Of a DNA stretch of 23,014 nt, positions 2,771 through 23,014 are shown piece after piece. Positions within the stretch are counted from its first letter, which is position 1. Each line of letters starts with the position of its first letter. The translations under genes and the position numbers were made by a program. The notes under the pieces are model-generated. The model ran no database searches and was not told the origin of the DNA. It was given only the letters and a program-made list of their open reading frames with translations. Where the stretch lies: the NCBI RefSeq assembly GCF_006345805.1, contig NW_021836736.1, positions 1-23,014 on the forward strand, in the 5' to 3' direction. Source of the stretch: Octopus sinensis (lineage: Eukaryota).

Positions 2771-2784
2771 ATATATATATATAT
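2662..2784. repeat. (TC)n/(TCTG)n-(TA)n microsatellite
   Basis: Directly visible. Confidence 0.9.
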
Positions 2785-3628: not shown

Positions 3629-4281
3629 TAAAACAAACTCAAATGAGGAGTATCAAAATCATTAAAATTCCTCATAAATAATCGATCACTAGTAATCGAT
3701 TTGACTTGAAGGACGAGTGTCAGTTTGCTTTGTTGTTTCACGGAAAACCCTAGCACTTTTAGGCTTTTATGCAAATCTGTCGTTAAATAACCCGATGCAT
3801 TTAATGCAGTAGCTGCAAAGGAGAACCGGCTGCTTGGGTTTGTGTGTTGTAAGGTGTTTGTTGCCAGAATGATAAGATACAGAACACAGAGGCCATTTAC
3901 TCGGACATTATGAATCTTTGTCCTTCTGTCTAGCATGATATTTTATCAGTGTTTCTGTTGATATGGAAGTGACCAATGGCAACTGATGTCTACCTAGTAT
4001 TCATGTCCAAGTTACGCATATATTCAAGTGTCCCGTTTGGTACCCCAAGTGGTGGTATTAGCTCTAGTACTGTAAAAACGTTATGATGTTGTTGTTTTTT
4101 TTATCGAATACAACAAGCTCTGGTTTACATATTTTCAAGGTTTGCCGAAGAATTTCCTCTGTCATTCTAATTTTCACACCTCGATATAGCGTCATCATTA
4201 TAAATTGTGTGGAAATGGTATCATTTGTCATGGGAGAAGACGTAGATAAACAGGCCATGTATGTATGTATGTATGTATGTA

Positions 4282-4542
4282 GGCTATTTAGCTTTATTTC
4301 TAGATTTATCGCCAATGGAGAAAGTGTTGGTTTCTAAACGCAGTTCAAGGCTAATTTACTGGAACTTCAACAACCTCAACAGGGTAGTGGTGCATGCATG
4401 TGTATGTATATGTGCAAGTATTTGGTGTCAGTACCGGTCTATATATTTTGTTTTATGAATGTGTTGCGTGCGTGACATGTGAATATCTATTTATACGCTA
4501 AGATTTTGGGAAGTCTGACATATTTTGACAATTCACTGATCT
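4282..4542 (-). mobile_element. 3' end of an RLE-type LINE (copy A) ending AAATAAAGCTAAATAGCCT-(ACAT)n
   Basis: Homologous to copy B: plus-strand AGATTTATCGCCAATGGAGAAAGTGTTGGTTTCTAA versus AGATTTCTTGCCAACAGAGAAAGCGTCGGTTTCTAA. A degenerate ITGTVKICKTFQ-like coding end lies at ~4540-4500. Confidence 0.65.
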
Positions 4543-4550
4543 GTGTATGT

Positions 4551-4936
4551 AAGCTATTATTCAGTTTTATTTCAAGATTTCTTGCCAACAGAGAAAGCGT
4601 CGGTTTCTAACATAGATCCAAGGCCCCTTCATTGAAATTTCAACATCAACGGGGTATGTATGTATGTATGTATGTATGTATGTATGTATGTATGTATGTA
4701 TGTATGTATGTATGTATATACGCAGATTTTATATGTTTTGTTTTATATATATATTTTCATGTATATAGTTACATATCTAGACATGCTCATATATACTTCA
4801 ATGATAAATTTCTGGAAAGTTTTACTGATTTTTACAGTTCCAGTGATGAACTGGATCTGTAGTCTACGAATCAGCCTTCTCCTTTTTGGTTTTGAGAAGC
4901 TTAATTTCTCAAGATTGGTATTTAGGCAGTGTGTTA
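4551..4936 (-). mobile_element. 3' end of an RLE-type LINE (copy B) ending AAATAAAACTGAATAATAGCTT-ACATAC
   Basis: The ORF-track peptide LEKLSFSKPKRRRLIRRLQIQFITGTVKISKTFQKFII resembles the extreme C-terminus of R4/Dong-like ORFs. The 3' UTR has an internal (TATG)n (~4657-4716) and a polyA signal. Confidence 0.68.
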
Positions 4937-7041
4937 GTATGTATGTATGTATGTATGTATGTATGTATGTATGTATGTATGTATGTATGTATACATGCTG
5001 TTCTGAATACATTTTTCAAATACCCTTCCATTAGACAAGAACTGGTCTCCAACCCAATGTTAGCTCCCTTTATTGGAATTTTGACAATAGCAACTACGTA
5101 TTTATGTTTGGAGGGATGTAACTATGTTACACATTGACATATGTATGCACGAGTGTGCCTGGGAATATTTTCTGAGGAACTCCTAACCTACTCTAATAAT
5201 ACTATCTGCTTAATGTAAGCAGAAATTATCCATGAATGCACCTCGTGGCTTGTTGGTTGCTGGGTGTTGCCGAAGGGATATGATGCTTCATTCAAAGGAT
5301 GTTTAAATCGATGTTAAGACTCTACCATGTTGTTTTCAATGTAGGTAAAGCTTGTCAATATCACTATTGATGTGGCGATTTCTGCTGGTAGTTAGTAGTT
5401 CCCGGGCTTTAACATTAATGGTCCAGATTCCATCTAAAATGTAGTCCAGCAGGCCAAGTACCAGTATAAATATTGGTACACAATATACATGAATGCCGTG
5501 CATAGAGCACTAAGAATCATACATTTTTCATCTGGGTGTTATGTCACGGGCTTTCATAGGACATATTTTCGTAGAAACAGTTGGGTTACTGATATATGTC
5601 GTTAGAGGTTCATTATTCGTATTAGTGGTTCATCGTTGTTCAACCTACGATGAGGGAACGTCTATCACGGCCAAACTTCATTCCGATGCTCTCTAACAAT
5701 GTCGTTTCTATATCAAATCCCATCTTCATATTGTTTATATTTTCGACATATACTTTTACATTATCCACAGGGAAGATGTATCTATCAATAAGCTGTTCTT
5801 ATAAACCAATCGCGTACTATTTTAGCGTTCCTCGACAAATAGAATAAGGTGTTCATTGTCTGGATAAACAGCGTAACAAGGAGACTGTCTCGAAATATGC
5901 TATCACACCACTGCCAGAACTGTATGATTGATTAAACTTTTGTCAGTACCTCATCAAACTCATTTCTCCCTCGCTGCTTATTCAGCTGAAATAGATTTTT
6001 TGTGTCATAGTCACAATGATCCTGGACGATTAGTGTAGATAAACTGCATAGATAAACTACATATATTAGATTCTGGCATGAAATTGCTGATTGCCATTTG
6101 AGTGGCTTTGTTCGTTTGTATCAGTATTATTTCTGCAAATACCAGCCAGATTGCTCTATTAGTATCTTCTCTGAGAGTTTGCTGATAGAAGCTGATAAGG
6201 TGTTGTCAATAAAAAGTAATTATTTGTACTGATTGCCAACAATCAAAACAATCAAACCTCTTTCTGGTGCTACCCAAAATCCTGACGTGTTTCTGTTATA
6301 ATTTCAAGTACGAGTATCAACATTGATACTATATAGTTTTAGTGCAACGTAGAGATAATCCTATCACACTCTTATACTGTGGGTTTTCATTAATACAGGG
6401 AGAATACATATTTCTTATTCACCCTGCATATAAACTCTTCTTTCTCTTGAATGAATCTGTATTCTCTCGGGAAATTGTCTCAGTGAAACTTTGTACCGTC
6501 CTCTCATCTTTTTGCAGCTTACTTTTTGATTTCAATTTCCTGCCTGTCAATTTCTTATAATGACAGTTTTTCACTGATAACTTTTAACTCTTGCTTAATG
6601 GTCATCAATTTGATTTCGAATGTCTCTTCTTGCTATCTCTAAACATATTTTGTGTTTTATGTTTCAATGTTTGTTGGAGAGAAATATATCTATTTGTGTG
6701 TTTACACTTGATATATACCACCTCATAGTTGATGGTCTTCCGTTGATGAAACAATCACTGAAGCAAAAAGTAATACGATTGATTTGCATCAGTTTATTTC
6801 TATATTATCTTCAAGATACTGCTTAACAGTTGTAGGAAGGCAATATAAACAAGAGGTTATTTGCCAGAATAATGACTCATTGCGTTTTTTTTCCAAATAT
6901 TCTCTATGTATATCTCTAATCACAGTCTGCATCAAATCTCTGGATCTCTTAGCGTTGATGAAATTTGGCCTCTCTCACATCCTTTGTATTAGCAACATAT
7001 CACTCTTCAATTAAAGCATTTCATTATCAATATCTATCAGA

Positions 7042-7460
7042 AGGCGGCGAGCTGGCAGAAACGTTAGCACGCCGGGCGAAATGCGTAGCCGTATTTCGTC
7101 TGCCGTTACGTTCTGAGTTCAAATTCCGCCGAGGTTGACTTTGCCTTTCATCCTTTCGGGATCGATTAAATAAATACCAGTTACGCACTGGGGTCGATAT
7201 AATCGACTTAATCCGTTTGTCTGTCCTTGTTTGTTCCCTCTTTGTTTAGCCCCTTGTGGGTAGTAAAGAAATAGGTATTTCGTCTGCCGCTACGTTCTGA
7301 GTTCAAATTCCACCTTTCATACTTTCGGGGTCGATTAAATAAGTACCAGTTATGCACTGGGGTCGATATAATCGACTTAATCCGTTTGTCTGTCCTTGTT
7401 TGTCCTCTCTGTGTTTAGCCCCTTGTTGGTAGTAAAAAAATGGGTATTTCGTCTGCCGTT
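7042..7460 (+). mobile_element. tRNA-derived SINE (family D) plus tandem head-less repeat units
   Basis: A-box-like TGGCAGAA (7053), B-box GAGTTCAAATTCC (7115-7127), central GCCTTTCATCCTTTCGGGATCGATTAAATAAATACCAG (Meta/MESC-domain-like from memory), tail AGCCCCTTGTGGGTAGTAAAGAAATA. GTATTTCGTCTGCCG recurs at 7091, 7275 and 7444. Confidence 0.85.
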
Positions 7461-7707
7461 GTTTGTAATTCTGTGCACAGTGGCTTACCTTAAGAAAAAA
7501 ACTGGTTTCTTTCCAAAGCACAATCAGGCAATCTCTACACATCTAGAGGAGACAGTCATATACTTCATCTCGATTCTTTTTCACTGACAGATTTAACGCT
7601 GTTTAACGGCGATAAACTGGATTCAAGTTCCTCTTTTTGCTAAATCGAAACATTTTTTTGTATTTAATTTCAACTTTTGTTAGTGAGAAGTGTTGCTATT
7701 TATTCTT

Positions 7708-7995
7708 TACTCTATTTTTCTCTTTTACTTGTTTCAGTCATTTGACTGCGGCCATGCTGGAGCACCGCCTTTAGTCGAGCAAATCGACCCCAGGACTTAT
7801 TCTTTGTAAGCCTAGTACTTATTCTATCGGTCTCTTTTGCCGAACCGCTAAGTGACGGGGACACATCAGCATCGGTTGTCAGGCGCTGTTGGGTGGTGGG
7901 GGACAAACACAGACACACAAGCATACACACACACACACACACACACACATACATACATACATAAATACATACATACATACATACATACATACAAC

Positions 7996-8055
<60 letters not shown>

Positions 8056-8257
8056 TATATATATATTATATTATACATATATATATATACACGTATATAC
8101 GACGGGTTTCTTTTAGTTTCCGTCTACCAAATCCACTCACAAGTCTTTGGTCGGCCCGAGGCTATAGTAGAAGACACTTGCCCAAAGTGCCACGCAGTAG
8201 GACTGAACCCGGAACCATGTGGTTGGTAAGCAAGCTACTTACCACAAAGCCGCTCCT
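7708..8257 (-). mobile_element. Full-length CORE-like SINE (family C) with expanded internal microsatellite
   Basis: Near-identical to 2784-3195; the internal (CA)(CATA)(TA) tract is expanded to ~7915-8100. Confidence 0.9.
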
Positions 8258-8486
8258 ACGCCTCGATAAGCATTTCATCATAGGCGATAGGTCAACGACC
8301 TTCTTTGCAATGTACTGGAGTAAAAACAAACTGAGATTGAATTGCAGCTGTTATTTCTTTACGTTCAAGACACTACTACACAACAGACGATATAAACAAG
8401 CGCTGATTTGCCTAACTGATAAATCAAAAAATATCTCATAAAATCGCAAACAGATTTTAGTGTTCAAAAGTTCTGATGATCCCTCA

Positions 8487-8645
8487 TCGTTATTCAGCCT
8501 ATTGCTATACGTCCTTTAGGCTCAAGAACTGATGAATATCAGGCTCAAGAACTGATAAATATACCCCCTCGTTATTCAGCATATTGCTAAACGTCCTTTA
8601 GGCTCAAGAACTGATGAATATCAGGCTCAAGAACTGATGAATATC
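8487..8645. repeat. Nested tandem duplication (82-bp unit containing a 23-bp duplication)
   Basis: CTCAAGAACTGAT at 8521, 8544, 8603 and 8626; TCGTTATTCAGC at 8487 and 8569. Confidence 0.9.
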
Positions 8646-8974
8646 CGACCATCTACAAGACACAGATTAAAATATTACTGAGGGCTATGCCTAAAAATAG
8701 CCAAACATCGCATTTAAAGAGAGTTCTATTCGATGAATTCAAAAACATTGCATCACCACTGTTTCACAGACGTGCTGTTCTTTCTTTTTCTCCCGTTTCA
8801 CCGTTTCAACGACATCTGATTCACCGAACTAGCTAACAGGATAGTCCTTCCACCCAGATCCAACCATCTAATCCACTTCTCCTCCCATTGTCATTCTTAG
8901 AGTGCTCTATTTTCTAAGCCCGGCTCTAAGTACTCCATCCAATCATTCCACCCTATGACTGAAGTCCTCTAGCA

Positions 8975-10169
8975 TTGCCTCCTCCTCATTCCCCCACCAC
9001 CACCACCACTACGCCGTCATCGTCATCGTCGCCGCCATTACTCGTCATTGTCAATTTTAGTTTAGCAATGACAGCGATGAACACCCCCACCGCCGCCGCT
9101 GCCCGGTACCACCACCGCCATCACCATCACCATCACCATCACCATCACCACTACTATTACTACTGTTAACAACAAATAACACCATTATCTCAAGAAACAT
9201 CTCCTCTGAAGACTACCACCTTCACTATACTCAATAAAACAGTCACCATCATCATATTCATCATTAATATCTCATTCTCTTCTCCTCATTTTCCTCTTCC
9301 TTATAATTCTCTTTCCCCTCCTCTTCCTCCTCCTCCTCCTCCTCCTCATCATCATCATCATCTTCATCATATTTCATCACCATCATTATCATGAGGATCA
9401 GTTTCGTCTTGGAGTTCATTGTCATCTTCATAGTTCTTACCATTCCGTATCTTTTCATCTTCTTCATCCTCCTTTTCATGAACCCCATCATCGCTGTCAT
9501 CGTCACCGCCACCACCGTCGACGTCGTCGTCCTCCTCCTCCTCTTCCTCTTCCCCACTCTCCTCCTCTTCCTCCTCCTCATTCTCATCCCCTTCCTCCTC
9601 CTCATTCTCATCCCCTTCCTCCTCCTCCTCTTCTCTCAGCACCATCAGCAACATGATCATTGACACCAGCCTCCTCCAACCCTCGCCCTCTTCTTCTACT
9701 CCTCCCCTTCCTCTTCAGCCTCCTCTTCCTCATCCTCTTCTCTCAGCACCATCACCAACACGATCATTGACACCAGCCTCCTCCTCCTACCCTCACCCTC
9801 TTCTTCTCCTCCACTCCCTCTTCCCCCTCCTCTTTCCCCTCCTCTTCCTCATCTCTCAACACCACCAACACGATCATTGACACCAGTCTCATGCTCCCCC
9901 TCCTCCCTCCTCCTCTCATGATCATCACAATCCTCCTCCCTCCTTCCTCCTCCTCATCATCATTCATCGCCACCACCATCTTTATCTCTGTTATCATTGA
10001 CGATGTGAGTATGTCATCAACTTCTCAATATCATTACAGCCTCAACTACATAGAAGATTATATTTTTATTCTCATACTTCTATTAATTTTCATTTCATTG
10101 ATTTTGCTGCTGTTATTATCATTATTGTTATTATTATTATTATCATCATTATTGTTATTATTATTATTA

Positions 10170-10221
<52 letters not shown>

Positions 10222-10230
10222 TGCTGCTGT
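8975..10230. repeat. Trinucleotide low-complexity field (CAC/CAT/CCT, ending in (TTA)n)
   Basis: Directly visible; contains three copies of GATCATTGACACCAG (9655, 9762, 9872). Confidence 0.9.
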
Positions 10231-10499
10231 ATTCCATATTATTCATATGTTTTTTTTTTAAAATTATTTAGTTCTTTGTGAATTTTTTTTTTCTTTCATT
10301 TCATATTTTTTTTCTTCTTCCACCATTACAATTCAAAATGAAGTATTCGCTATTGCAGTTGAAGCCATCCACCGTTTTTCAATATCAATTTTGTTGATGT
10401 TCTTCACCTAATTCATCATGGCTGCCAAAGAAAAATAGTCCATTGATAATTAAATTTCATCGCGGTTCAGAAGTTGGACATTTTTTTTTTCTTTTAAGA

Positions 10500-11095
10500 T
10501 AAAGAGAGAACGAAAGGGACCGAGAGCGAGAGAGAATAAGAGAGGTGGAGGAAGAGAAAGAAGGAGCATGACAAATAAAAGCAGACAAAGAGTAAAAGAA
10601 AGATTAAAGAGAGAAGAAAAAGAAAGAAGAGAAGTAAGAAAAAGGTAGAGAGAGAGAGAGGGAGCGAGAGAAAAAAGAGAGAATAAGAGAGAGATGGTGG
10701 GAGAGAATGAGAGAGAGAAAGAGAGAATAAAAGAGATGGAGGGAGAGAAAGAGAGAGAGAGAATAAGAGAGATGGAGGGGAGAAAGAGAGAATAAGAGAG
10801 ATGGAGGGAAACAAAGAGAGAGAGAGAGAGAGAGAAAGAGAGAATAAGAAGGAAAGAGAGAGAAAAAGAGAAAGAGAAAGAGAAAATAAGAAGGAGAGAG
10901 AGAGAGAGAGCATGACAGAAATAAAGACAGACAAAGAGCAAAAGAAAGATTAAAGAGCGAAAAAAAAGAAAGAGAAGGAAGAAAAGGCAGAGTGAGAGAG
11001 AGAGAGAGGGAAGAAGAGAGGGAGAGAGAGTGAGAAAAAGAGGCAGAGAGACAGGAAGGCAGAAAGAAAGATACAGACAAGGCTAAAAAGAGATT
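10500..11095. repeat. Polypurine (GA-rich) tract with internal minisatellite
   Basis: Almost all A/G on the + strand; GAGAATAAGAGAGATGGAGG-like units recur; GCATGACA...CAGACAAAGAG...AAAGAAAGATTAAAGAG is duplicated at 10566 and 10910. Confidence 0.9.
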
Positions 11096-11189
11096 TAGCT
11101 CATTTACATTTTTTTTTGCTTGTTGCTTTTTGGAGAGGTTTTTTTTTGTTTTATATCTTTCTTCGTTTCCTTCTTCTTGTCGTTATCGC

Positions 11190-11213
11190 TGTCATCATTG
11201 CAGTCGTCATATG

Positions 11214-11244
<31 letters not shown>

Positions 11245-11313
11245 CTTCTCCTTCTTCTCCAACTTCTTCATCTTACTATTGATATAACAACAATGGCAAC
11301 ACCACCACCAAAG

Positions 11314-11351
<38 letters not shown>

Positions 11352-11418
11352 TATTATTATTATTATTAATAATAATAATAATAATATTCGCATCATCATC
11401 AGCATTATTATCATCATC

Positions 11419-11452
<34 letters not shown>

Positions 11453-11960
11453 TGACCATCATCATCATCATCATCATCATGACCATCCTCCTCCTCCTCC
11501 TCCTCACCATCATCATTATCATCATTATCTTCATCACCATCATCATTGTCGTTGTCGTCGATGTCATCATCCTCCTCCTCCTCCTCATCATCATCATCAT
11601 CACCATCATCCTTATCATCATCATTGTCGTTGTCGTCGATGTCATCATCATCCGCATCATCATCACCACCATCCTCCTCCTCATCATCATCATAATCATT
11701 GTCGTCGTCGTCAGTATTCGTTTTCTTCCCCCTCCTCCTTATCATCATCATCAACGTCATCGTAATCCTCATCCTCCCCCTCCTCCTCCTCCTCCTCATC
11801 ATCATCTCATGGACGTCGTTATTATGAATTTCTTTTATAGTGTCTTTATTGTTGTTGTATTAATATCATAGTTGATATTATTGTCGATGTTGCTATCAAT
11901 ATTATTATCAGTATTATTAAGTTGTTCTTAATGTTATTGTTGTTGTTGTTGTTGTCGATG
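11190..11960. repeat. Trinucleotide field (CGT, TTA/TAA, CAT, CCT, TTG)
   Basis: Directly visible; CATTGTCGTTGTCGTCGATGTCATCATC is duplicated ~78 bp apart. Confidence 0.9.
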
Positions 11961-12086
11961 CCGTTGTTGTTTGCAATTTTCTTTTCTGATCTTCATCCTC
12001 ATTACTTCGTTGAACCGTCGTCGTCCCAGTCTCGCTGTTTGCACTGTTGGCTGTCAGCCGGTCCGTACGTGTTTATCATTCCATTA

Positions 12087-12102
12087 CACACACACACACA
12101 CA

Positions 12103-12139
<37 letters not shown>

Positions 12140-12161
12140 CACACACAACACACACACACCA

Positions 12162-12196
<35 letters not shown>

Positions 12197-12353
12197 TGCC
12201 CACTTCACACACGCACAACACTAGCACAGCCCTACACGCATACACTCAGAGAACTCAGACATGCTCACACGTACATACATTACATACATTCATTTATACG
12301 TACACATACGAATACACAATATATGCGTACATACATATAATATCCGTGCGTAA

Positions 12354-12391
<38 letters not shown>

Positions 12392-12435
12392 TATCTATGG
12401 TAGCTGTATACGTAGGAGAATAGGGAAATATTTTG

Positions 12436-12479
<44 letters not shown>

Positions 12480-13091
12480 ATCTATCTATCTATCTCTCTC
12501 TTCTCTATCTATCTATCTATATATATATATATATCTATTTATCTATCAATTTATCTCTCTACACACACACAAACACACACACATATATATATACGTATAT
12601 GCATACATTGCAGATGCACATCCAAAAGCACCTAGCCCCGGAGTTACAATCAAATAAATACACACATTTGTATGTACGTGAGTGCGTATGTATGTATATG
12701 TATGTATGCATATATGTTTGTATGTATGTATGTATGTATGTATGTATGTATGTATGTATGTATGTATGTATGTATGTATGTAGTATGTATGTATGTATGT
12801 ATGTATGTGTGTATGTGTGTATGTATGTGTGTAGTATGTATGTAGTATGGTGTATGTATGTGGTATGTATGTATGTATGTATGTATGTATGTATGGTGTA
12901 TATGTATGAATGTATGTATGTATGTATGTAGGTATGTGGTGTAGTTGATGTAGTATGTATGTATGTATGTAGTATGTATGTATGTATGTAGGTGTATGTA
13001 TGTGTGTATGTATGTATGTATGTTGCATGTATGTATGTGGTATGTATGTATGTGTGTATGTATGTATGTATGTATGTATGTATGTATGTAT
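12087..13091. repeat. Microsatellite field: (CA)n, (TG)n, (TATC)n, long degenerate (TATG)n
   Basis: (CA)n ~12087-12195, (TATC)n ~12436-12545, (TATG)n ~12715-13091. Confidence 0.95.
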
Positions 13092-13545
13092 GGAGACCTT
13101 ATTAGAATGAAGGGTAGCACGATCCCTATGCAGATGCTATGTGGGAATGGAAAGAGACCCCGGCAGAAACCAAGGCTGCGATTTAAGGGCTGTGTCAAGT
13201 CCTCATTAAAGGCCTGTGATATGCAGGAGACTGACAGAGAGAGAGAGAGAGAGCAATGCTTGTCATCGCCCCAGATGGAGGAAGCAGGTTAAGGAGAAGG
13301 TCGACACCTTTGAGAGAGAATGTATTCTGCATAACGAACTTAAGTGTGCTGCTTGAAAGCGCAGTGCTGGTGTAGTGAATGGGGAAAGCTTGGTTTGCAA
13401 TGCTTGCAGTAGTGTATGCTTGTCAAGGGCAGGGCTCATTAGCCACCAACGGAGCCGCAAATGCAAAATATAAGTTAGTCCTAGAGCGCACAATGTTCCC
13501 GAAGGTCAGCAATGGTCTTCCTCGATCTCGAGTGGACGGCCATCA
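13092..13545 (+). mobile_element. 5'-truncated RTE-clade (BovB-like) LINE, 3' fragment
   Basis: GDLIRMKGSTIPMQMLCGNGKRPRQKPRLRFKGCVKSSLKACDM, then a shifted frame CHRPRWRKQVKEKVDTFERE...LVCNACSSVCLSRAGLISHQRSRKCKI* (stop 13471-13473). This is the characteristic RTE C-terminus with its CxxC...H motif, followed by a short 3' UTR. Confidence 0.88.
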
Positions 13546-13630
13546 TGTATGTATGTATGTATGTATGTATGTATGTATGTATGTATGTATGTATTGTATG
13601 TATGTATGTATGTACGTATGTATGTATGTA
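13546..13630. repeat. (TATG)n tract abutting the RTE 3' end
   Basis: Directly visible. Confidence 0.95.
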
Positions 13631-13645
13631 TACACTCTGTTTGAT

Positions 13646-14051
13646 TACTCTTTTACTCTTTTACTCGTTTCAGTCATTTGACTGTGGCTATGCTGGAGCA
13701 CCGCATTTAGTCAAGCACATCGACCCAGGACTTATTCTTTGTAAGCCTAGTACTTATTCTATCGGTCTCTTTTGCCGAACCTCTAAGTTATGGAGACGTA
13801 AACACACCAGCATCGGTTGTCAAGCGAAGTTGGGGGCGACAAACACAGACACCAAGATATACACACACATACATATATATATATATACATATATACGACG
13901 GGCTTCTTTCAGTTTCCGTCTACCAAATCCACTCACAAAGCTTTGGTTGGTCCGAGGCTATAGTAGAAGACACTTGCCAAGGTGCCATGCATGAGACTGA
14001 ACCCGGAAACATGTAGTTCGTAAGCAAGCTACTAACCACACAGCCACTCCT
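13646..14051 (-). mobile_element. Full-length CORE-like SINE (family C), more diverged copy
   Basis: Colinear with 2784-3195 from the (TACTCTTT)n tail to the ACCACACAGCCACTCCT head. Confidence 0.88.
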
Positions 14052-14281
14052 TGCTAAATCTTTCTTGCATGTCTTTCGATTTTCCCTGAATTGGAGTTTC
14101 TTAAATGACCTTTATCACAGGGATATCCTTTCCTGGTTTGTTAAATTTAATAACAAACGTCTTACTTCCATCTCTGTCGTACTAAATCACGCCGCTTTAT
14201 CTCTTCTGTTTTGTGTATATCTGATTCATTTTCTATTTCTCGTTTTCCCTGCCACCCCTAGCACTCTCCTTCCCATTCTGA

Positions 14282-14282: not shown

Positions 14283-14362
<80 letters not shown>
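14283..14362. repeat. (TATC)20 at the 5' junction of the Tx1-type LINE
   Basis: Perfect tetranucleotide run. Confidence 0.95.
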
Positions 14363-14365
<3 letters not shown>

Positions 14366-14462
14366 TCTATTATCTACACAAAATTTTGCCCCTTGTGGGC
14401 AAAATTTAAAAGAAAAAATTCTCATAGCCTTCGTGGTTTCATTTAGCCATTTTATTTCCAAA

Positions 14463-16558
14463 ATGGCCACGGTCACCACGAGGCTGAGGTGCAAGTCAAG
14501 CGTGACGCAGAGACAGAAAACAGGATGCTCTGTAGCATACGCTGAACCTGACAACAACACACCTCCACCACATCAACACCGACAACAGCCAACAAATACA
14601 AAACAAAGGTCGCAAGGCCAAGCACCGTCAACACCATCAGTGAGTCCACCACCAACACCGCAACACAACACCATGGCAGAATCTGCTACTAAAACTGCTA
14701 TCCCTGCTAAGACATCGCCACCAATAACAATACCAACATCACCATCACCGCCACCAAAGACCGTGCCGTCAATGCTACTAATACCACTAACACCCGCCGT
14801 CACCAAGAACGACACACAATAAACAACAAAAACAACAACAACACAACGACGACGACAACAACATTCCCTTCAACCACTGCTCACTCCATCACCAAGTGAA
14901 GAAATAACGACGACAAGCAAACGAAATGCCGAAATTTGCGCTAATGCAGGACTAAATTACGCAGGCAATTTTCCACCCCTTGCTAGTTGCATAATCAGCA
15001 ACCACAAACCTACAACCCACACCCTGCCATCAACACCAAACCACACCGGCCAGTAACAACAATAACAAAACAACAACAAACTTCGCCGATGCGATAAAGA
15101 AAAGGTAACAAAAGTTTGTTTACTACACAACAGATTAAAGATTGCAGAAACCTTATTACAAATGAAAACGGAAAAATACTCTTACACATACCTCAAGACA
15201 TACTGAATGAGGAGGAAAAAAAAGACAATTGTATATAAAATCACAAATAAAAAAACTAAAAGTCCAGAAAAGGCAAGCACAGACAAAGTCGAAAAGTGCT
15301 TACGCCCCATCTGGGGATACAAGGATTATGTGACTTGGGCGAACAAGTTCGCCCACGTACAGGTGGTTTTTTCAGAATGAAGAGTTGGAAGAAGAAATCT
15401 CAACGATAACCCTTCATTCTGATGAACTAACGATGACACCGAGTTCCTCGGCCAGAAGGTGACGAAGGTCATTATCAGTGGTGTCCCCCAAGTGACTACA
15501 CACTGTGGATAACATCCGCCGTACATCCGAAATGGAGGACTTAAACATCCTAGATATCGGTGTTCGAAAAACAAGGACTGGCTGGGAAAGAGAATAGAGT
15601 TCCTCTTCCACATAAGTCAAGACGACATAATAAAAATCCCCACCCACGTACATCTTGAGGATGCCCAAGTTATACGTAGTAGTCGAGGGCAGAAGGCCAC
15701 GATGCTATACATGTGGCAGTGAGGCACACCTCAAAAAGGAGTGCAATCTGCCGCGCAAATTACAACAACAACAGCCACATGAAAAATCACAAAAGCCAGC
15801 ATTATTGCCCACACACCAATATGACAGCTAGTCAAGAAGCTGTATGCGGAAATGCAGGAAAAACAACAAAGAACAAGCAACCCAACCAAACAACACCAAC
15901 ACCAGCGCCAAGAACAGAATCATCACCACCAACAACAAATAAACCAATTCCAACACCAAGAATAACAACGAAGAGACAAGCACCAAGGATGTAGGAGAGA
16001 CAATAACCACAACGAACCCCCAGCAACACCCTCCCCGCGCACCACAACAATATCTACAACCGCACAAACACACCCAGACGCTTTACCCCTGCCCCCTGCT
16101 GATTCGTCAGACTTTTCATCTAACGATGAAAGTTCGACAGGTGGCAAATAGCCACAGGGGTAAAAGAAAAAGATCAAGAAAAACCAAACAAGAAATCGCA
16201 ACCAAAGCAGGGAGATACCTGAACCCTGAAAACTCCATACACCAACAAAACAAGCACCAAACCACAAAAACAATGCTATCAGCGATAGACACCAAAGACT
16301 CCAAACTAATGGAGTACATCACAGGATACACAAACATTTGTGAAGATGACTTTAAAAATAGCAATCATCCACGCACTACACCACCCAAACACATCAAAAT
16401 ACTACACATCACACAAACACAACACCACAAACTCAAAGCCCTCTTCCCAAATGCTGTGGGGGGTTTCCAGAAATATCTATCCCAAAAACTACTATAAAAA
16501 CCTCCTCGAAGACACATCAAAGAACGAGGAAGCCAAAACTTTCGACACAAGTAAGTAA
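14463..16558 (+). pseudogene. Tx1-type ORF1 (gag-like nucleic-acid-binding protein), frameshifted
   Basis: ATG at 14463 (MATVTTRLR) and a long Thr/Pro/Asn-rich region. VVEGRRPR-CYTCGSEAHLKKEC contains a CX2CX4HX4C knuckle at 15703-15744. The last frame ends ...EEAKTFDTSK* at 16558. Confidence 0.8.
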
Positions 16559-16608
16559 CTCTCTGTACTTTCATTTTTGTGTTTTAAAGCACACACCCCA
16601 ATAGAATC

Positions 16609-19600
16609 ATGGTCAAGATTGGTTGTGTGAATGTGCGTGGCTTGGGGTCTCCTTGGAAACAAGGATATCTCCTAAATGATATCAAGTCATGATTTGGGAA
16701 TCATAGCCATAAGTGAGACCAGACTCCACGAGCCACGGGCCCTAAAGTCCATGTTTGGCGGACAGTTTAACATTATTTCGCTCCCTGTCTGCCGAGGATG
16801 GGCGGTAGTGGCACCGCGGTACTTTTTCACAAGAGCCTGGATCGAAGTCAAGACGATATTCGTAGACCCGGAGGGTAGACTGGTCGTTCTGGATGTTGAC
16901 GGCAGCAATGGGTGCGCTTTTCGACTCGTATCAGTCTACGCACCGCACTAAAAGGTCGGGCGGATTTCTTTCGACGTCTAGAAGTATCTTGGGAACGTCT
17001 CGTCCTTTACTCTTAGTGGGGGATTGGAATGCTACCTTGGACACGCATGTGATACGTGGGTACGTGGTAGAGACAGAAACAGAAGGGGATGCAAATGCCT
17101 CAGAGACCTGCTCAGACGATTCCAACTGTCTGACAGGTACCGACTCGACCACCCAATGCACCAACGTGGACATGGAGCAACCGCAGTGGTCGTCGAGATC
17201 GTATCTAGATAGGATACTGTGTAGGACAGTAGACAAGGATAACTTAGGATGTCCACAATTCCACACAGTCAGCTACACGGATCACAAATTGGTGACGTGT
17301 ACGCTAGACTTAGATAAGGCACATAGACAGGGTCCTGGGTACTGGAAACTGAACGCATCATTCCCGTCCAGACAAGTTTTCAGAGACCGGATTAGCACAC
17401 TAGTAAAGAGGGCTTTGACGGGAGCCATCATCAACAACAAATGGTGGTTTGCCCTCAAAGAGCAGTAAAAGCAGAAGCGATTAGGTACAGCAAAGCATTA
17501 GCCATAGATAGAATAGAGAGTAGAGGGTGAGCTAGTTAAGAAGCTAGAAGAGGCAATTAGAAGCGGCATCGCATCCGACGTTTTGGCGGCGAGGTTGGCC
17601 CTCGACCACCACTTCAACGCCAACACGAAGGATGTGCTGTCAGAGCTAGGATGCGTGCTCTAAGGAACGAAGGTGTTGGAGCCGCGAGAGAGGCCCGGTG
17701 GCAGAGGCGCAACAGGGCAACAAAGCCACCATTCGGTCACTGGTAGTAGATGAACAGGGGCGCGAATTGCTCGAGCCAAGTAAAATGTGTGAGGCCTTTC
17801 AGGCATTTTGCCCGACTGTTCGGACGAGTGGAGGCACAAGAACGTAGGGTGGACTTCAGTGCCTACCTACATAGCCTACCACGACTCTCGACAAGAAAGG
17901 CAGGGTGCTGCGAAGGTGCCATCACGGCAGGCGGAAGTGCGGGAAGCGATGGCAGAATGCTCGAGGGACAAATAACCGGGTTTGGATGGTCTACCCTACG
18001 AGCTTTACAATTGTATGCCAGACTTGTTTGGAGATCTCTTGGCGGCGGTGTGTACTGCAACTGGCAGCAAAACGGGAGCATTCCTGGTTTTGTGAGCCGA
18101 GGAACCGTAACACTGTGAAGAAAGATCTAAACAAGGGAAATGTAATAGATAACTTTAGGCCCCATCTCTGCTAATGCAGACTTGAAAATTTTGGCCAAGG
18201 TGCTAGCCAAGAGGTTGGCGCTTGTCATCGAGAAACTGGTCGAACGGCGCAAAACATGCGCCGTGCCAGGCCGGACCATCCATGACAACCTCCATCTGAT
18301 GCGCTACATCATAGACAGGGTAGTTAACGAACCTGGCATGGGTGGGGCCCTGATCAAATTGGATCAATCAAAGCCTTGATAGGGTAGATCATCGATACTT
18401 GGAGGCAGTCCTGAGAGCGGCTGGTTTCGGTCCCGTCTTCCGCGGCTGGATAGCTGCCTTGTACAGAGGCATCCGTTCGGTAATTCGCGTAAATGGACAT
18501 CTATCGAGACCTTTCGACATTGCACGTTCGGTCCGTCAGGGATGGCCCCTCTCGGCGCTTCTATACGTATTGACTCTTGAGCCACTACTGCGGAAGCTGG
18601 CGACTCTAAGGGGCATCCCGCGAGAATTGGGATGCGGGACGAGCGTGTCTGCATACGCGGACGACGTCACCGTCATAGTGTCAAGCCACGAGCACATCGA
18701 GGGGTCGGCGAGACACTGAAAGACTACGAAGCGCGGTGACAGGAGCAAAAATCAACCGGGAAAAGTCAGTGGGCTTGCGGCTCGGCACCTGGAGAAGCAA
18801 GCCCATGCCGTCCACCAGTACCTCCGTCGTGGGACGCTGGACAGACGGCCCGGTTGAGTTGCTCGGGGTCTGGTTCGGTCTGGACCTCCAAATGGAGAAG
18901 AACTGGAACGAGATAACGAGTAGGGTGGTCACTCTCGCCCAGCAATGGGCCGAGAGGAAACTGTCCCTAAAAGGTCGGGCGGAGGTGGTGAACGCGTACA
19001 TCGCGTCCATCATCTACTACCGCCTGACCGTCGTACCTTGTCCCGACCCTACCATCACCAAACTAGAACGCATCCTCTACCGCTTCTTGTGGAAAGGATG
19101 CGTCCCGATGGTCAGGCGATCCATTTGCTGTCAACCACCCGTTAAAAGGAGGGCTGGGCATGCCGTGGTTGATGATGCGCAGACACGCGCTGAGACTGCG
19201 ACATCTCCGGCTCTATGTAGACGACGGTGAACAGGTGTGGTCGCCGTTGTGAGGTACGCATTCCCGCAATCGTCTCCATGACCGAACTACAGTCGTGGAT
19301 CAAAAAGAGGCCGATAAAGGCGAATGGCACCGCGAGTGTCGCGTTGCTCTCAAGCAACTCTGCCGTCCCGGGTCGACCTTGAGTGACTTCAACACAACCA
19401 AAGCATTCTATAGGGGATTAGTGGAGGGGAGGTACGACGACGAGCTCGGGGCAAACCTGGGCGTCGACGAGGAATACCTGACCCGCCTGTTTCAAAACGA
19501 CTTTCGGCCCGGGACCTATGGACAACTTCCAGAGATCCCTGGCCTGGCGGTGCTACCGAGAAGCGCTACCCGTTCGGGATAAGCTCTATAGGCATGGCTC

Positions 19601-20039
19601 GAGAAACACGGGGCCGACCTGCCCGAGATGCGGGCAGAGCGACGAAACCGCTCTGCACGCACTCGTGCAGTGTCCAGCAATTTCCCACCTGTGGGCTTAT
19701 GTCGAACGACTGCTGTCACGTGTGGGACGTGTCGGTTTATCAGCCGAGTCTATCGTTAATATCGTCACACCTCCTTCCTTCAAACGGGAAGGAAGAGCTA
19801 TTTTTATCATACTTGTGGCTATGGCGAAAGAATGTATCTGGTGGACGCGCCTGAAAGGATTAGAGACAAACACTTTCCTCTCTGGTCAATCTCCCATCAA
19901 CTTCTTCAAGTATCACTTGAAGAAAAAAGTGAGAGTAGAGAGGCAAGTTTTGTCTAGTGAATGTTTTAAAAAAAGATGGGTGAATGTAGCAAGGATGGCA
20001 CGTATGAATGACGAAGCCACCTTGACTATGATTCTATGA
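16609..20039 (+). pseudogene. Tx1-type ORF2 (APE endonuclease, reverse transcriptase, C-terminal zinc finger), frameshifted
   Basis: APE motifs: MVKIGCVNVRGL, AISETRL, VGDWN, SYLDRIL, YTDHKLV, followed by GPGYWKLNAS. RT motifs: GLDGLPYELY, KILAKVLAKRL, PGRTIHDNL, VRQGWPLSALLYVLTLEPL, AYADDV, GAKINREKS. Downstream: LSLKGRAEVVN and CPRCGQSDETALHALVQC; stop at 20037-20039. Confidence 0.92.
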
Positions 20040-20415
20040 ACCGTAAAAATTAATACAGAGAGTTGCTTATTTGCAAAAAAAAAAATAAAAAATAAGAAAT
20101 ATAACATGTGACTTCATTGACCGAGGTTACTGTGGTCTTTTCCGTAGGCTTTTCTTTCCACGGGTAAACCTCATCTGTCCTCCCCTTTACACTTCATATT
20201 GACATTTCTGTGATAACGATCCATATTGATCAATTTTTTTTCCTCTCCCCCTTTTTTTTTCACCCCCCCTTTTTTTGTCCTCTTTCTCTCCTTTTACGAT
20301 CCCTTTTGATCGACCCCCCCTTTTTTTAATTTTTATTTTTATTTTTTATTTTTTTTACCTTCAAAAGAAAAGCTTTACCTTGTAATTTGTTCTATCTGTG
20401 TGCAGCCCTGTGTGG

Positions 20416-20421
20416 AATAAA
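20416..20421 (+). promoter_or_regulatory. Polyadenylation signal of the Tx1 element (also at 20985 and 21681 in the truncated copies)
   Basis: AATAAA lies 6 nt before the element end in all three copies. Confidence 0.6.
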
Positions 20422-20448
20422 GAAACATATCTATCTATCTATCTATCT

Positions 20449-20892
20449 GAGCTATTTTTCATCATCTCTTGTGGCTATGGCTAAGGAATGTATCTTGTGG
20501 ACGCGTCTGAAAGGATTGGAGACAACCCTTTCCTCTCTGGTTCAATCTCTCTCAACTTCTTCAAGTACCACTTGAAAAGGAAAGTGAGAGTAGAGAGGCA
20601 AGTTTTGTCTAGCGAATGTTTTAAAAAAAGATGGGTGATGTACAAGAATGGCACGTATGAATGACGAAGCCACCTTGAGCATAGTCCTATGAACCCAGAA
20701 ATCGAAAACAGAAGTTGCTTATTTGCAAAAAAAAAAAAAAAAAATAAGAATATAAATGTGACTTCATTGACCGAGGTTACCGTGGTCTTTTCGCAGGCTT
20801 TCTTTCCACGGTAAACCTCACCTGTCCTCCCCTTTACACTTCATATTGACATTTCTGTGATAACGATCCCTATTGATCATTTTTTTTCCCTC

Positions 20893-20924
<32 letters not shown>

Positions 20925-20996
20925 TTAATACCTTCAAAAGAAAAGCTCTACCTTGTAATTTGTCTCTGTGGCAGCCTGGTGGCTAATAAAGAAACA
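20449..20996 (+). mobile_element. 5'-truncated Tx1 copy 2
   Basis: Colinear with the long copy from position 19795 to its end; preceded by (TATC)5 (20428-20447) and followed by (TATC)12 (20997-21044). Confidence 0.92.
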
Positions 20997-21046
<50 letters not shown>

Positions 21047-21053
21047 CTATATG

Positions 21054-21692
21054 CACGTGTGGGACGATCCGGTTTATCAGCCTAGTCTATCATCAATATT
21101 GTCACGCCTTCTTCCTTCAAACGGGAAGGAAGAGCTATTTTCATCATTCTTGTGGATATGGCGAAAGAATGTATCTGGTGGACGCGTCTGAAAGGATTGG
21201 AGACAAACACTTTCCTCTCTGGTCAATCTCTCATCAACCTCTTCAAGTATCACTTGAAAAGGAATATGAGAGTAGGGAGGCAAGTTTTATCTAGTGAATG
21301 TTTCAAAAAAAGATGGGTGAAAGTAGCAAGGATGGCACATATGAATGACGAAGCCACCTTGAGCATAATCCTATGAACTCGGAAAATTTAAAACAGAGGG
21401 TTACTTACTTGCAAACAAATGTGTTAACATGTGACATTATTAACCGAGGTTACCGTGGTCTTTTCCGTAGGCTTTTCTTTCCACGGATAAACCTTATCTA
21501 CTTCCCCCTTTACACTTTACATCATAACATTTCTGTGATACACGATCCCTATTGATCGTTTTTTTCTTTCCCTTTTACGATCCCTTTTGATCGAAAACCT
21601 ACCCCACTTTCTTTTTCTCTCCCCAAAAAGAAAAGCTCTACTTTGTAATTTGTCCCGTCTGTGTGCAGCCATGTGTGGCTAATAAAGAAACA
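21054..21692 (+). mobile_element. 5'-truncated Tx1 copy 3
   Basis: Colinear with the long copy from position 19717; ORF end ...MAKECIWWTRLKGLETNTF...ATLSIIL* (21152-21376); followed by CATC(TATC)17. Confidence 0.92.
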
Positions 21693-21693
21693 C

Positions 21694-21776
<83 letters not shown>

Positions 21777-21796
21777 CTTCTTTCTTTCTTTCTTTC
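21693..21796. repeat. (TATC)n grading into (TTTC)n
   Basis: TATC register 21693-21764, then TTTC units to ~21796. Confidence 0.95.
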
Positions 21797-22030
21797 GAAG
21801 TAGTCAAATGCCATCCAACAGCTGGATGTGAGATACCCCGAATATTTGTTTAGGTATTTCTCAGGGAGAAGGAAGTTCTGAAATAACAAAGGCCTCGTTG
21901 CGATGGTGGCGATATCGTTCTTGCTTGTTTCCGGACTCAGCTGACTTTGACTTTTCAGGCGAGACTCTTAGCAGTGTTGTGCAAGCTGTTATTCACTTTC
22001 AATTTCAGCATGGGGATCGTCGATAGCCAC

Positions 22031-22566
<536 letters not shown>

Positions 22567-22896
22567 TATATACATACATTACACATATATTATTTTATAT
22601 GTAAGTTATTGATGCGATTCTACGTAAGAAAAATACAAAAAGTAGCATGAATAATCATATATTAGACTTCAATGCCAAGATCGCACCATGTTTCAATTGC
22701 TACTTAAGTCTCATCAGTGGAGGAATCATAGATTTAAAGCAGTAATTTAAATGCAGCGAAATAATTTAGAAGACTTCTTTCGGCTCATTTTCATATTACA
22801 GGAAATAAGTAGTAATTAGTTTGCTTACAAAAGCTGTGCCGTTCGAGTATTGAATACTACAGGTGGCAAGAATGAGATTCGCTCAAGGTACACAAC

Positions 22897-23014
22897 AGGA
22901 GTGGCTGTGTGTGGTAAGTAGCTTGCTTACCTACCATATTGTACCAGGTTCGGTCCTACTGCGTGGCATCTTGGGCAAGTGTCTTCTACTATAGACTCGG
23001 GCCGATCAAAGCCT
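22897..23014 (+). mobile_element. CORE-like SINE (family C), 5' part, cut by the window edge
   Basis: AGGAGTGGCTGTGTGTGGTAAGTAGCTTGCTTACC...CTTGGGCAAGTGTCTTCTACTATAG matches the family head. Confidence 0.88.

What the first reader, a model, noticed from the sequence alone, without database searches (positions are those of the whole stretch)
14283..21796. Candidate (TATC)n/(GATA)n-homing Tx1 retrotransposon: three stacked insertions in one microsatellite
Seen: the architecture is (TATC)20 - long element - (TATC)5 - 548-bp 3' copy - (TATC)12 - ~640-bp 3' copy - (TATC)~18. All copies have the same orientation and end at the same base (AATAAAGAAACA|TATC, or |CATC in copy 3) with no poly(A) tail. 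The 5' flank of the long copy is also TATC, and what precedes it (CCCATTCTGAC) is not an element 3' end, so TATC is not merely a tail. Known: Tx1-group LINEs include sequence-specific families such as Kibi (TC repeats), Koshi (TTC repeats), Keno (U2 snRNA), Dewa (tRNA arrays) and Mutsu (5S), and specificity is generally attributed to the APE domain. Inference: this is a strand-specific TATC-targeting family. I do not know of one described, but cannot exclude that it is in Repbase/Dfam. Other TATC tracts here (12436-12545, ~22246-22325) are unoccupied.
Basis: partly seen in the sequence, partly recalled or inferred. Interest (0 to 1): 0.9.

Follow-up and report, generated by a model that had tools for sequence, protein, structure and literature searches.

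The report
LINE copies stacked in TATC microsatellite
Three decayed copies of an L1/Tx1-type retrotransposon sit head to tail inside one (TATC)n microsatellite of a cephalopod-like genome; the repeat most likely acts both as the element's own 3' tail and as its landing site, which is a new example of a known behaviour and not a new kind of element.

Summary
The layout is (TATC)20, a ~6.05-kb LINE, (TATC)5, a 548-bp 3' copy, (TATC)12, a 639-bp 3' copy, then CATC(TATC)17(TTTC)8. All copies are on the + strand, all end AATAAAGAAACA, and none has poly(A).

The long copy is a decayed APE-RT-zf-RVT LINE with a CCHC ORF1. That places it in the L1 superfamily. Tx1 is probable but could not be tested directly.

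The three copies are 84-90% identical, have different 5' truncation points and carry unequal private changes. They therefore come from separate source RNAs and are not a local duplication.

"TATC-homing through APE specificity" is only partly supported. AATAAA followed by terminal tandem repeats is a known LINE/SINE tail layout. Close relatives carry other ends: (ATT)n with 4, 16 or more than 30 units, or a bare ATCTAT with an ordinary AT-rich target-site duplication. Relatives and their partner SINEs also stack head to tail without any TATC.

My best reading is that the microsatellite is both tail and target, with RNA-tail/target pairing during target-primed reverse transcription. The non-element TATC array on the 5' side (TATC covers about 1.2% of the neighbourhood) argues against a pure tail. 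I could not retrieve any further copy of this family with both flanks, so the genome-wide test is still open.

The parts
14283..14376 (+). 5' flanking microsatellite: (TATC)20 perfect, then degenerate TATTCTATTATCTA. It is preceded by unique sequence (…CCCATTCTGAC), not by an element 3' end.
   Evidence: self-BLAST finds no element sequence upstream
14377..20427 (+). Long, probably full-length, decayed LINE: 5' UTR, ORF1 remnants, ORF2 remnants, and a 388-bp 3' UTR ending AATAAAGAAACA.
14380..14407 (+). Perfect hairpin AAAATTTTGCCC-CTTGT-GGGCAAAATTT at the very 5' end. GCCCCTTGTGGG is identical to the 3' module of the window's SINE and is followed by TAAAAGAAAAAA. It is either part of the 5' UTR or a fourth, ~45-nt stacked 3' fragment.
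   Evidence: unresolved
15655..16497 (+). ORF1 remnants: a CCHC zinc knuckle (15655-15831) and a C-terminal part (16279-16491) homologous to the intact ORF1 of the Argonauta relative.
   Evidence: Pfam zf-CCHC E=1e-3, just below the Pfam cut-off; tblastn
16609..17468 (+). ORF2 apurinic/apyrimidinic-type endonuclease (APE) domain, broken by several frameshifts and stops.
   Evidence: Pfam Exo_endo_phos is weak on the largest fragment here but clear in the intact relative, E=3e-12
18149..19230 (+). ORF2 reverse transcriptase domain, in three frames.
   Evidence: Pfam RVT_1 E=7e-10; 65% identity to the Argonauta ORF2; homologues
19518..20039 (+). ORF2 C-terminal region with the zinc-binding motif CX2CX8HX4C, then the stop codon.
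   Evidence: Pfam zf-RVT E=6e-9
20428..20448 (+). (TATC)5 plus T, between the long copy and copy 2.
20449..20996 (+). Copy 2: a 5'-truncated 548-bp 3' end (last ~80 codons plus 3' UTR), 89.5% identical to the long copy. It lacks the TTTTACGATCCCTTTTGATCGA segment.
20997..21053 (+). (TATC)12, then TACTATATG (degenerate or untemplated junction).
21054..21692 (+). Copy 3: a 5'-truncated 639-bp 3' end, 85.9% identical to the long copy. It derives from the most basal source variant of the three.
21693..21796 (+). 3' flanking compound microsatellite: CATC(TATC)17 followed by (TTTC)8.
12436..12547 (+). Unoccupied, imperfect (TCTA)n array on the same strand.
22246..22325 (+). Unoccupied (TATC)20 array on the same strand, part of a (GTAT)n-(TATC)n-(TA)n compound repeat.
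7040..7458 (+). tRNA-derived SINE ending GCCCCTTGTGGGTAGTAAAGAAATA, the same 3' module as the LINE. It is followed head to tail, with no spacer, by a 5'-truncated second copy and a 19-nt third start. A TATCTATC octamer lies directly upstream (7031-7038).

Best explanation
The element is a 'stringent'-type L1-superfamily LINE, probably of the Tx1 clade, in a cephalopod genome. Its transcript ends in a conserved 3' module followed by a microsatellite: …GTGGCTAATAAAGAAACA + (UAUC)n. The AAUAAA signal sits immediately before the repeat. A transcript from a copy that lies in a TATC array therefore carries UAUC units, either read through from the flank or added by RT slippage.

During target-primed reverse transcription, the nicked (GATA)n bottom strand of a TATC array pairs with this tail and primes cDNA synthesis. 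The array can be a free microsatellite or the tail of an earlier copy. New copies therefore land in TATC arrays, in one orientation, in a fixed 3' register and without poly(A). Repeated hits build head-to-tail stacks.

On this view the microsatellite is both tail and target. Specificity comes at least partly from RNA-DNA pairing and not only from the APE domain. Changing the tail, as in (ATT)n relatives, would change the landing site.

Shown: the anatomy, the domain content, the separate origin of the three copies, the different tails in relatives, and clade-wide stacking. Inferred: the pairing step, read-through as the origin of the tail, and the role (or not) of the APE.
For: 1. Anatomy and fixed 3' register.
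2. APE, RT, zf-RVT and CCHC ORF1. Human L1 ORF2p is the best solved relative, 1.8e-51 against 1e-26 for R2.
3. The copies have different truncation points and different indels and are 84-90% identical. Rooted with the same-family contig L005, private changes are 7, 25 and 15, and the long copy and copy 2 share 14 derived sites against copy 3. This means different source RNAs and probably different times.
4. The 5' flank of the stack is TATC not preceded by an element end, while TATC covers only about 1.2% of the surrounding sequence.
5. AATAAA plus terminal tandem repeats is a described tail layout of LINEs and SINEs (UnaL2, ZfL3, mollusc SINEs; PMC4758252).
6. Relatives carry the same 3' module with other ends. 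L003 (73% aa identity) has (ATT)>30. The Argonauta locus L011 has (ATT)4 on a full-length LINE and (ATT)16 on a fragment. Argonauta L001 and about 30 SINE copies end ATCTAT(T), which is 1.5 ATCT units.
7. Stacking with no spacer occurs without TATC. L011 2540-9200 carries six elements in a row. Four of nine SINE heads abut a previous 3' end. The stacked SINEs are 85% or 98% alike, so the stack has mixed origins. L015 has tandem full-length LINEs with a ~7.55-kb period. The window's own SINE is stacked as well.
8. Co-transcribed target sequence is said to strengthen target-specific integration of other LINEs (PMC4494074).
Against: - There is only one locus. No second copy of this family with both flanks could be retrieved.
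- There is no RNA evidence that transcripts end in UAUC.
- APE-encoded specificity, as assumed for Kibi and Koshi, is not excluded, and it would give the same fixed register.
- The Argonauta relative L001 inserted at an ordinary AT-rich site with a 15-17-bp target-site duplication. Tail-guided homing is therefore not obligatory in the clade.
- In L001 a full-length copy plus a 3' fragment share one duplication. A stack can therefore arise in one event.
- Two TATC arrays nearby are empty.
- RNAalifold does not call a conserved 3' hairpin.
Confidence: 0.5

Rival explanations
1. This is a Tx1-clade family whose APE endonuclease recognises and nicks (GATA)n/(TATC)n in one register. The element RNA has no repeat tail. 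The stack results from three independent sequence-specific insertions into one pre-existing microsatellite.
For: - TATC lies on both sides of every copy, with a fixed 3' junction and one orientation.
- The 5' array is not an element tail.
- The copies have separate sources.
- Copy 3 comes from the most basal source, so later copies may have entered the free array upstream of it.
- Tx1-clade families targeting (TC)n, (TTC)n, (TTCC)n and (TTTC)n are known, and their specificity is generally ascribed to the endonuclease.
Against: - The closest relatives with readable ends carry (ATT)n or no repeat at all.
- Stacking is seen in relatives without TATC.
- The AATAAA-plus-repeat layout is typical of element-borne tails.
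- No APE data exist.
- Tx1 membership is untested.
Confidence: 0.2
2. (TATC)n is only the element's 3' tail and insertion is not targeted. The stack arose in one retrotransposition event. Either the RT switched templates from a partly copied RNA to the tail of another RNA, or a composite master locus was read through and copied as a unit. The 5' TATC array is then a coincidental microsatellite or a tail-only insertion.
For: - In Argonauta L001, a full-length copy, about 120 bp and a 3' fragment are bounded by a single TATTTTTAAAATTTGTA duplication.
- The order here, full-length copy upstream and 5'-truncated copies downstream, is the order expected from serial template switching.
- Two stacked Argonauta SINEs are 98% identical.
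- Terminal repeats are common LINE tails.
Against: - The 5' TATC array would then be a coincidence of about 1.2%.
- The three copies differ by 10-16%. Their private changes are unequal (7, 25, 15) and they nest as shared-derived groups. One event would therefore need three different RNAs and unequal later decay.
- A tail-only insertion upstream is an ad hoc assumption.
Confidence: 0.22
3. The arrangement arose after insertion or is artificial: unequal crossing-over or replication slippage between TATC arrays duplicated a 3' end, or the assembly mis-joined repeats.
For: - Microsatellites promote unequal exchange.
- The window's SINE at 7144-7458 looks like a 169-bp tandem duplication with 93% matches.
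- Array lengths in assemblies are unreliable.
Against: - Copies 2 and 3 start at different element positions (19795 and 19717), differ by indels and are only 84% identical to each other.
- A mis-join would need near-identical repeats.
Confidence: 0.05

Closest known systems
Kibi (TC)n and Koshi (TTC)n of teleosts, and crocodilian Tx1 families in (TTCC)n/(TTTC)n (Kojima & Fujiwara 2004; Kojima 2015, PMC4494074; list in PMC3812793)
   Same: APE-type LINEs of the L1/Tx1 group found with the same microsatellite on both sides, in one orientation and without poly(A). A (TTTC)8 tract directly follows the last TATC array here.
   Different: The repeat is TATC, which is absent from the published target lists I could search. 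Membership in their clade was not tested. Close relatives here carry other repeats, which points to the tail more than to the endonuclease.
Stringent-type LINEs with terminal tandem repeats after a poly(A) signal: UnaL2 (TGTAA)n, ZfL3, and mollusc SINE/LINE tails (PMC4758252; details of UnaL2 from my own knowledge)
   Same: AATAAA is followed directly by short tandem repeats. A conserved 3' module is shared with a partner SINE. The number of repeat units varies between copies.
   Different: Those elements belong to the L2/CR1 group and are not reported to sit with the same repeat on their 5' side or to stack.
R1Bm, and the telomeric-repeat LINEs TRAS1 and SART1 of Bombyx (from my own knowledge; the general point is in PMC4494074)
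   Same: Target sequence co-transcribed at the RNA 3' end pairs with the nicked target and fixes the initiation site. Telomeric elements stack head to tail in the repeat.
   Different: They are R1-clade elements with experimentally shown sequence-specific APEs. Their targets are rDNA or (TTAGG)n, not a dispersed tetranucleotide microsatellite.
Dong (TAA)n of the R4 clade, and Waldo (ACAY)n and Mino (AC)n of the R1 clade (PMC3812793)
   Same: LINEs that insert into microsatellites.
   Different: They belong to other clades, and in the case of Dong the endonuclease is of another type. The (ATT)n seen in relatives here equals (TAA)n by unit, but these proteins are of the L1 type.
Penelope-like elements Naiad and Chlamys (PMC8557442)
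   Same: They show a bias for microsatellite insertion and multicopy head-to-tail insertions. Target-site duplications are hidden by the repeats.
   Different: They use a GIY-YIG endonuclease and a different RT lineage, so they are unrelated proteins.

Membership tests
L1 superfamily of non-LTR retrotransposons (L1/Tx1 group) | N-terminal APE-type endonuclease in ORF2 | tested here: met
   On the window fragment, Exo_endo_phos scores E=1.7e-3, below the Pfam cut-off because the domain is broken. The 65%-identical Argonauta ORF2 scores E=2.9e-12 over the whole profile. The best PDB matches are L1 endonucleases.
L1 superfamily of non-LTR retrotransposons (L1/Tx1 group) | RT closest to L1-type RTs | tested here: met
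   RVT_1 scores E=7e-10 in the window. The relative matches human L1 ORF2p at 1.8e-51, against 1e-26 for R2 proteins.
L1 superfamily of non-LTR retrotransposons (L1/Tx1 group) | C-terminal Cys/His zinc motif after the RT | tested here: met
   zf-RVT scores E=6.3e-9 at 19518-20036, with the motif CPRCGQSDETALHALVQC.
Tx1 clade | RT groups with Tx1, Keno, Kibi and Koshi, and not with L1 proper, in a phylogeny | not testable with these tools
   No named Tx1 reference sequence could be obtained: the paper holds no supplementary files, and the representative search and cluster look-up returned no names. Indirect support only: L1-Tx1 is the L1-type class annotated in octopus, and Tx1 is the only L1-superfamily clade among those listed for bivalves in a tree-based survey of molluscs.
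Target-specific Tx1 family (criterion of Kojima 2015: the same sequence in more than 20% of flanks) | The same sequence flanks many independent copies on both sides | tested here: inconclusive
   Three of three copies are flanked by TATC on both sides, but all lie in one locus. No other copy of the family with readable flanks was found.
Target-specific Tx1 family | Specificity resides in the endonuclease | not testable with these tools
   This needs an enzyme assay. Comparative data lean the other way, because relatives at 59-73% aa identity have (ATT)n or no repeat.
Stringent-type LINE with terminal tandem-repeat tail and partner SINE | Poly(A) signal directly followed by short tandem repeats of variable number at the element's end | tested here: met
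   AATAAAGAAACA is followed by 5, 12 or 18 units here. AATAAAAGAAAT is followed by (ATT)4, (ATT)16 or (ATT)>30 in relatives. The layout is described in PMC4758252.
Stringent-type LINE with terminal tandem-repeat tail and partner SINE | 3' module shared with SINEs | tested here: met
   The window SINE ends GCCCCTTGTGGGTAGTAAAGAAATA. About 30 Argonauta SINE copies end GGCCCTTGTGGCTAATAGAGAAATCTAT, like the LINE in L001.
Stringent-type LINE with terminal tandem-repeat tail and partner SINE | Conserved 3' stem-loop | tested here: inconclusive
   By eye there is a 4-5-bp hairpin: AGCCA/TGGCT in copy 3, GGCC/GGCC in L003. RNAalifold predicts no consensus pair on 14 sequences.

The most novel reading that the evidence does not exclude
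Across coleoid cephalopods, one Tx1-like LINE clade and the SINEs it mobilises choose their insertion sites mainly by pairing of the RNA 3' end with DNA that looks like that end. They therefore home to earlier copies' tails and to matching microsatellites, and they build head-to-tail stacks. They change 'target' simply by acquiring a new tail, such as (TATC)n, (ATT)n or ATCTAT, with no change in the endonuclease. This would make them both consumers and seeders of the tetranucleotide microsatellites that fill these genomes.
Probability: 0.3. Interest if true: 0.62.

Novelty: new member of a known kind. Interest (0 to 1): 0.42.

Why it matters
Microsatellite-associated LINEs are known, but how they choose their sites is, in the words of the 2013 review, 'not well understood'. 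This clade offers close relatives with different terminal repeats, plus partner SINEs. It is therefore a natural experiment for separating endonuclease specificity from RNA-tail pairing. It may also help explain two striking features of octopus genomes, the very high SINE load and the abundance of tetranucleotide repeats. For annotation, such stacks should be recognised as nested LINE/SINE insertions and not read as satellites or mis-assemblies.

Tried and rejected
1. More copies of the same family.
- A scan of metagenome contigs with a 24-nt conserved 3' UTR pattern gave nothing.
- A protein-guided scan of the same collection gave 163 pattern hits, none confirmed.
- The 3' junction pattern gave nothing in viral or prokaryotic genome contigs.
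- Same-family proteins P0001, P0003, P0004, P0121 and P0122 lie on contigs of 0.9-3 kb that stop before the junction or inside the repeat.
- The Logan contigs L006-L009, L013 and L014 hold older, more distant fragments without readable ends.

2. Tx1 versus L1.
- I looked for named relatives through the 1.8-billion representative search and a cluster look-up. No useful names came back.
- The Kojima 2015 paper holds no supplementary files as text.

3. Conserved 3' hairpin. RNAalifold called no pairs. I make no structural claim.

4. A target-site duplication for the full-length (ATT)n LINE in L011 was not found. The (ATT)3 upstream of the L011:2832 fragment is probably part of its own 3' UTR, so I did not count it as evidence of a target.

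5. A recent local duplication is rejected on divergence and on the different truncation points.

6. Literature searches found no TATC/GATA-targeting LINE. This does not exclude an entry in Repbase or Dfam, which I could not search.

Full report
**Observation.**
- 14283-14362: (TATC)20, followed by a degenerate TATTCTATTATCTA up to 14376.
- 14377-20427: the long element.
- 20428-20447: (TATC)5, plus one T.
- 20449-20996: a 548-bp 3' copy (copy 2).
- 20997-21044: (TATC)12, then TACTATATG.
- 21054-21692: a 639-bp 3' copy (copy 3).
- 21693-21764: CATC(TATC)17.
- 21765-21796: (TTTC)8.

TRF reports the same arrays. The alignment of the three 3' ends shows collinear copies in one orientation. AATAAAGAAACA, with one mismatch allowed, occurs only at these three ends, and none of 100 shuffles reached three matches. 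A self-BLAST finds no other fragment of the element in the window. Two more TATC arrays on the same strand, at 12436-12547 and 22246-22325, carry no element. Together they make up about 1.2% of the 15.5 kb of non-element sequence.

**What the long copy is.** Its reading frames are broken by many stops and frameshifts. The fragments still match Exo_endo_phos, RVT_1 (E=7e-10), zf-RVT (E=6e-9) and, upstream, a CCHC knuckle.

A nearly intact relative in Argonauta hians (L001, 65% aa identity) has a 476-aa ORF1 with CCHC. Its 1138-codon ORF2 has a single stop and contains full APE, RT and zf-RVT domains. tblastn of that relative maps ORF1 remnants to 15670-16491 and ORF2 to about 16609-20036 in the window.

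The best solved relative is human L1 ORF2p, at 1.8e-51 against about 1e-26 for R2. The APE matches L1 endonucleases best. The element is therefore an L1-superfamily LINE.

I could not run a tree against named Tx1 references. The literature makes Tx1 likely. L1-Tx1 is the L1-type class annotated in octopus. Tx1 is also the only L1-superfamily clade among those listed for bivalves in a tree-based survey of mollusc LINEs. All close homologues come from cephalopods (Argonauta, Acanthosepion) or from unnamed assemblies.

**Separate insertions or one duplication?**
- The copies start at different element positions (19795 and 19717).
- They differ by indels. For example, copy 2 lacks a 22-nt segment that the other two have.
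- They are 89.5% (long copy vs copy 2), 85.9% (long copy vs copy 3) and 84.1% (copy 2 vs copy 3) identical.
- Rooted with a same-family contig from another sample (L005), private derived changes number 7 (long copy), 25 (copy 2) and 15 (copy 3) in 452 columns. The long copy and copy 2 share 14 derived sites against copy 3.

The copies therefore come from different source variants, with copy 3 the most basal. A local duplication or an assembly artefact is unlikely. Sequential insertions are the simplest reading. A single event that used three different RNAs cannot be strictly excluded.

First, a poly(A) signal directly followed by terminal tandem repeats is a described tail layout for LINEs and SINEs: UnaL2, ZfL3 and mollusc SINEs (PMC4758252). 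Here AATAAA lies 6 nt before the repeat.

Second, relatives share the 3' module (…CCTTGTGGCTAATAAAGAAA…) but end differently.
- A 73%-identical element in a JGI metagenome contig ends in (ATT)n of more than 30 units.
- In Argonauta, a full-length LINE ends in (ATT)4 and a fragment ends in (ATT)16.
- The L001 LINE and about 30 SINE copies end ATCTAT(T), which is 1.5 ATCT units, followed by variable A/T-rich flanks.
- L001 has an ordinary 15-17-bp target-site duplication, TATTTTTAAAATTTGTA.

Third, head-to-tail stacking is a property of the whole clade and does not need TATC.
- L011 carries, on one strand and without spacers, a SINE, a LINE 3' fragment with (ATT)16, three SINEs and a full-length LINE.
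- Four of nine SINE heads in that locus abut a previous 3' end. The stacked SINEs are 85% or 98% alike, which shows mixed origins.
- A 50%-identical LINE in another assembly forms tandem full-length copies with a ~7.55-kb period.
- The window's own SINE at 7040-7458 shares the 3' module and is itself stacked.

On the other side, the 5' array of the stack is not preceded by any element end. A random insertion would be expected to land in TATC only about 1% of the time. If copy 3 is the oldest, the later copies entered an array that was not any element's tail.

**Mechanism.** The reading that fits all of this is that the microsatellite is both tail and target. The transcript carries UAUC units after the AAUAAA signal, either by read-through from the flank or by RT slippage. 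The nicked (GATA)n strand of any TATC array pairs with that tail and primes reverse transcription. This gives the fixed 3' register, the single orientation, the lack of poly(A) and the stacks.

The same logic, applied to ATCTAT or (AUU)n ends, explains the stacks and the different repeats in relatives. Co-transcribed target sequence is known to reinforce targeting in other LINEs (PMC4494074). The pairing step and the origin of the tail are inferences. An APE contribution is not excluded.

**Comparison with known systems.** The published microsatellite-targeting APE-type LINEs that I could find are:
- Waldo (ACAY), Mino (AC), Kibi (TC), Koshi (TTC) and Dong (TAA) (PMC3812793);
- crocodilian Tx1 families in (TTCC)n/(TTTC)n (PMC4494074).

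No text search returned a TATC/GATA-associated LINE. Repbase and Dfam could not be searched, and octopus L1-Tx1 families are certainly in repeat libraries. The finding is therefore best filed as a new member of a known kind. Its possibly more interesting side is a tail-guided homing habit shared by a cephalopod LINE clade and its SINEs.

**Limits.** Everything about targeting rests on one locus. No other copy of this family with both flanks could be retrieved from the collections available. Tx1 membership, APE specificity, transcript ends and assembly correctness remain untested.

Noticed in passing
window 7040-7458: A tRNA-derived SINE whose 3' end (GCCCCTTGTGGGTAGTAAAGAAATA) matches the LINE's 3' module, so this LINE clade is probably its partner. 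It is followed, with no spacer, by a 5'-truncated second copy and a 19-nt third start (TRF period 169, 93% matches). A TATCTATC octamer lies directly upstream at 7031-7038.
   Followed up: partly
window 14380-14407: A perfect 11-bp-stem hairpin AAAATTTTGCCC-CTTGT-GGGCAAAATTT at the first bases of the long copy. Its core is identical to the SINE/LINE 3' module and is followed by TAAAAGAAAAAA. It may be a fourth, ~45-nt stacked 3' fragment and not the LINE's 5' UTR.
   Followed up: partly
window 21765-21796: The last TATC array runs directly into (TTTC)8. (TTTC)n/(TTCC)n is the published target of a crocodilian Tx1 group. This may be coincidence, since compound microsatellites are common in this window.
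   Followed up: no
L001 4868-10668 (Argonauta hians, GCA_054771915.1): A nearly intact relative: ORF1 is intact and ORF2 has one TGA. It is followed by about 120 bp containing a SINE-like piece and then a second LINE 3' fragment. The whole is bounded by one duplication, TATTTTTAAAATTTGTA, so the composite moved as a unit, either by template switching or by read-through of a stacked master.
   Followed up: partly
L011 2540-9200 (Argonauta hians): Six elements in a row on one strand without spacers: a SINE, a LINE 3' fragment with (ATT)16, three SINEs (two of them 98% identical) and a full-length LINE with (ATT)4. The 40-nt 3' module recurs more than 25 times across the two Argonauta loci (35 kb).
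   Followed up: yes
L015 1-12180 (ENA ERZ26052130, contig ctg11195c, 26.3 kb): A 50%-identical LINE present as tandem full-length copies with a period of about 7.55 kb. The contig name ends in 'c', which by hifiasm-style naming (my own reading) would mean the assembler closed it as a circle, as happens with tandem arrays. The 3' end (…GGCCTTGTGCCACATTTGTA…ACAATAAATAATATC) abuts the next copy's long 5' UTR.
   Followed up: partly
window 13995-14056 (-) and 22850-23014 (+): Fragments of a second, different tRNA-like SINE family, one on each side of the locus and in opposite orientations. With the composition of the window, they point to an octopod genome.
   Followed up: no
window 1-13900 and 22030-22360: Microsatellite density is extreme (68 TRF rows): (GTAT)n, (TATG)n, (AC)n, (AG)n, (CAT)103, (TTA)35 and compound arrays. 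Nearly all TATC-type arrays are on the + strand.
   Followed up: no
window 12405-12440: The sequence just before the unoccupied (TCTA)n array reads GAGAATAGGGAAATATTTTG. This loosely resembles the AATAGAGAAAT end of the Argonauta SINEs, but there is no upstream GTGGCTA motif. It is probably chance.
   Followed up: no
window 8487-8644 and 9530-9890: An 82-bp tandem duplication containing a 23-bp sub-repeat, and a CT-rich array with a 107-110-bp period. Neither is related to the LINE.
   Followed up: no
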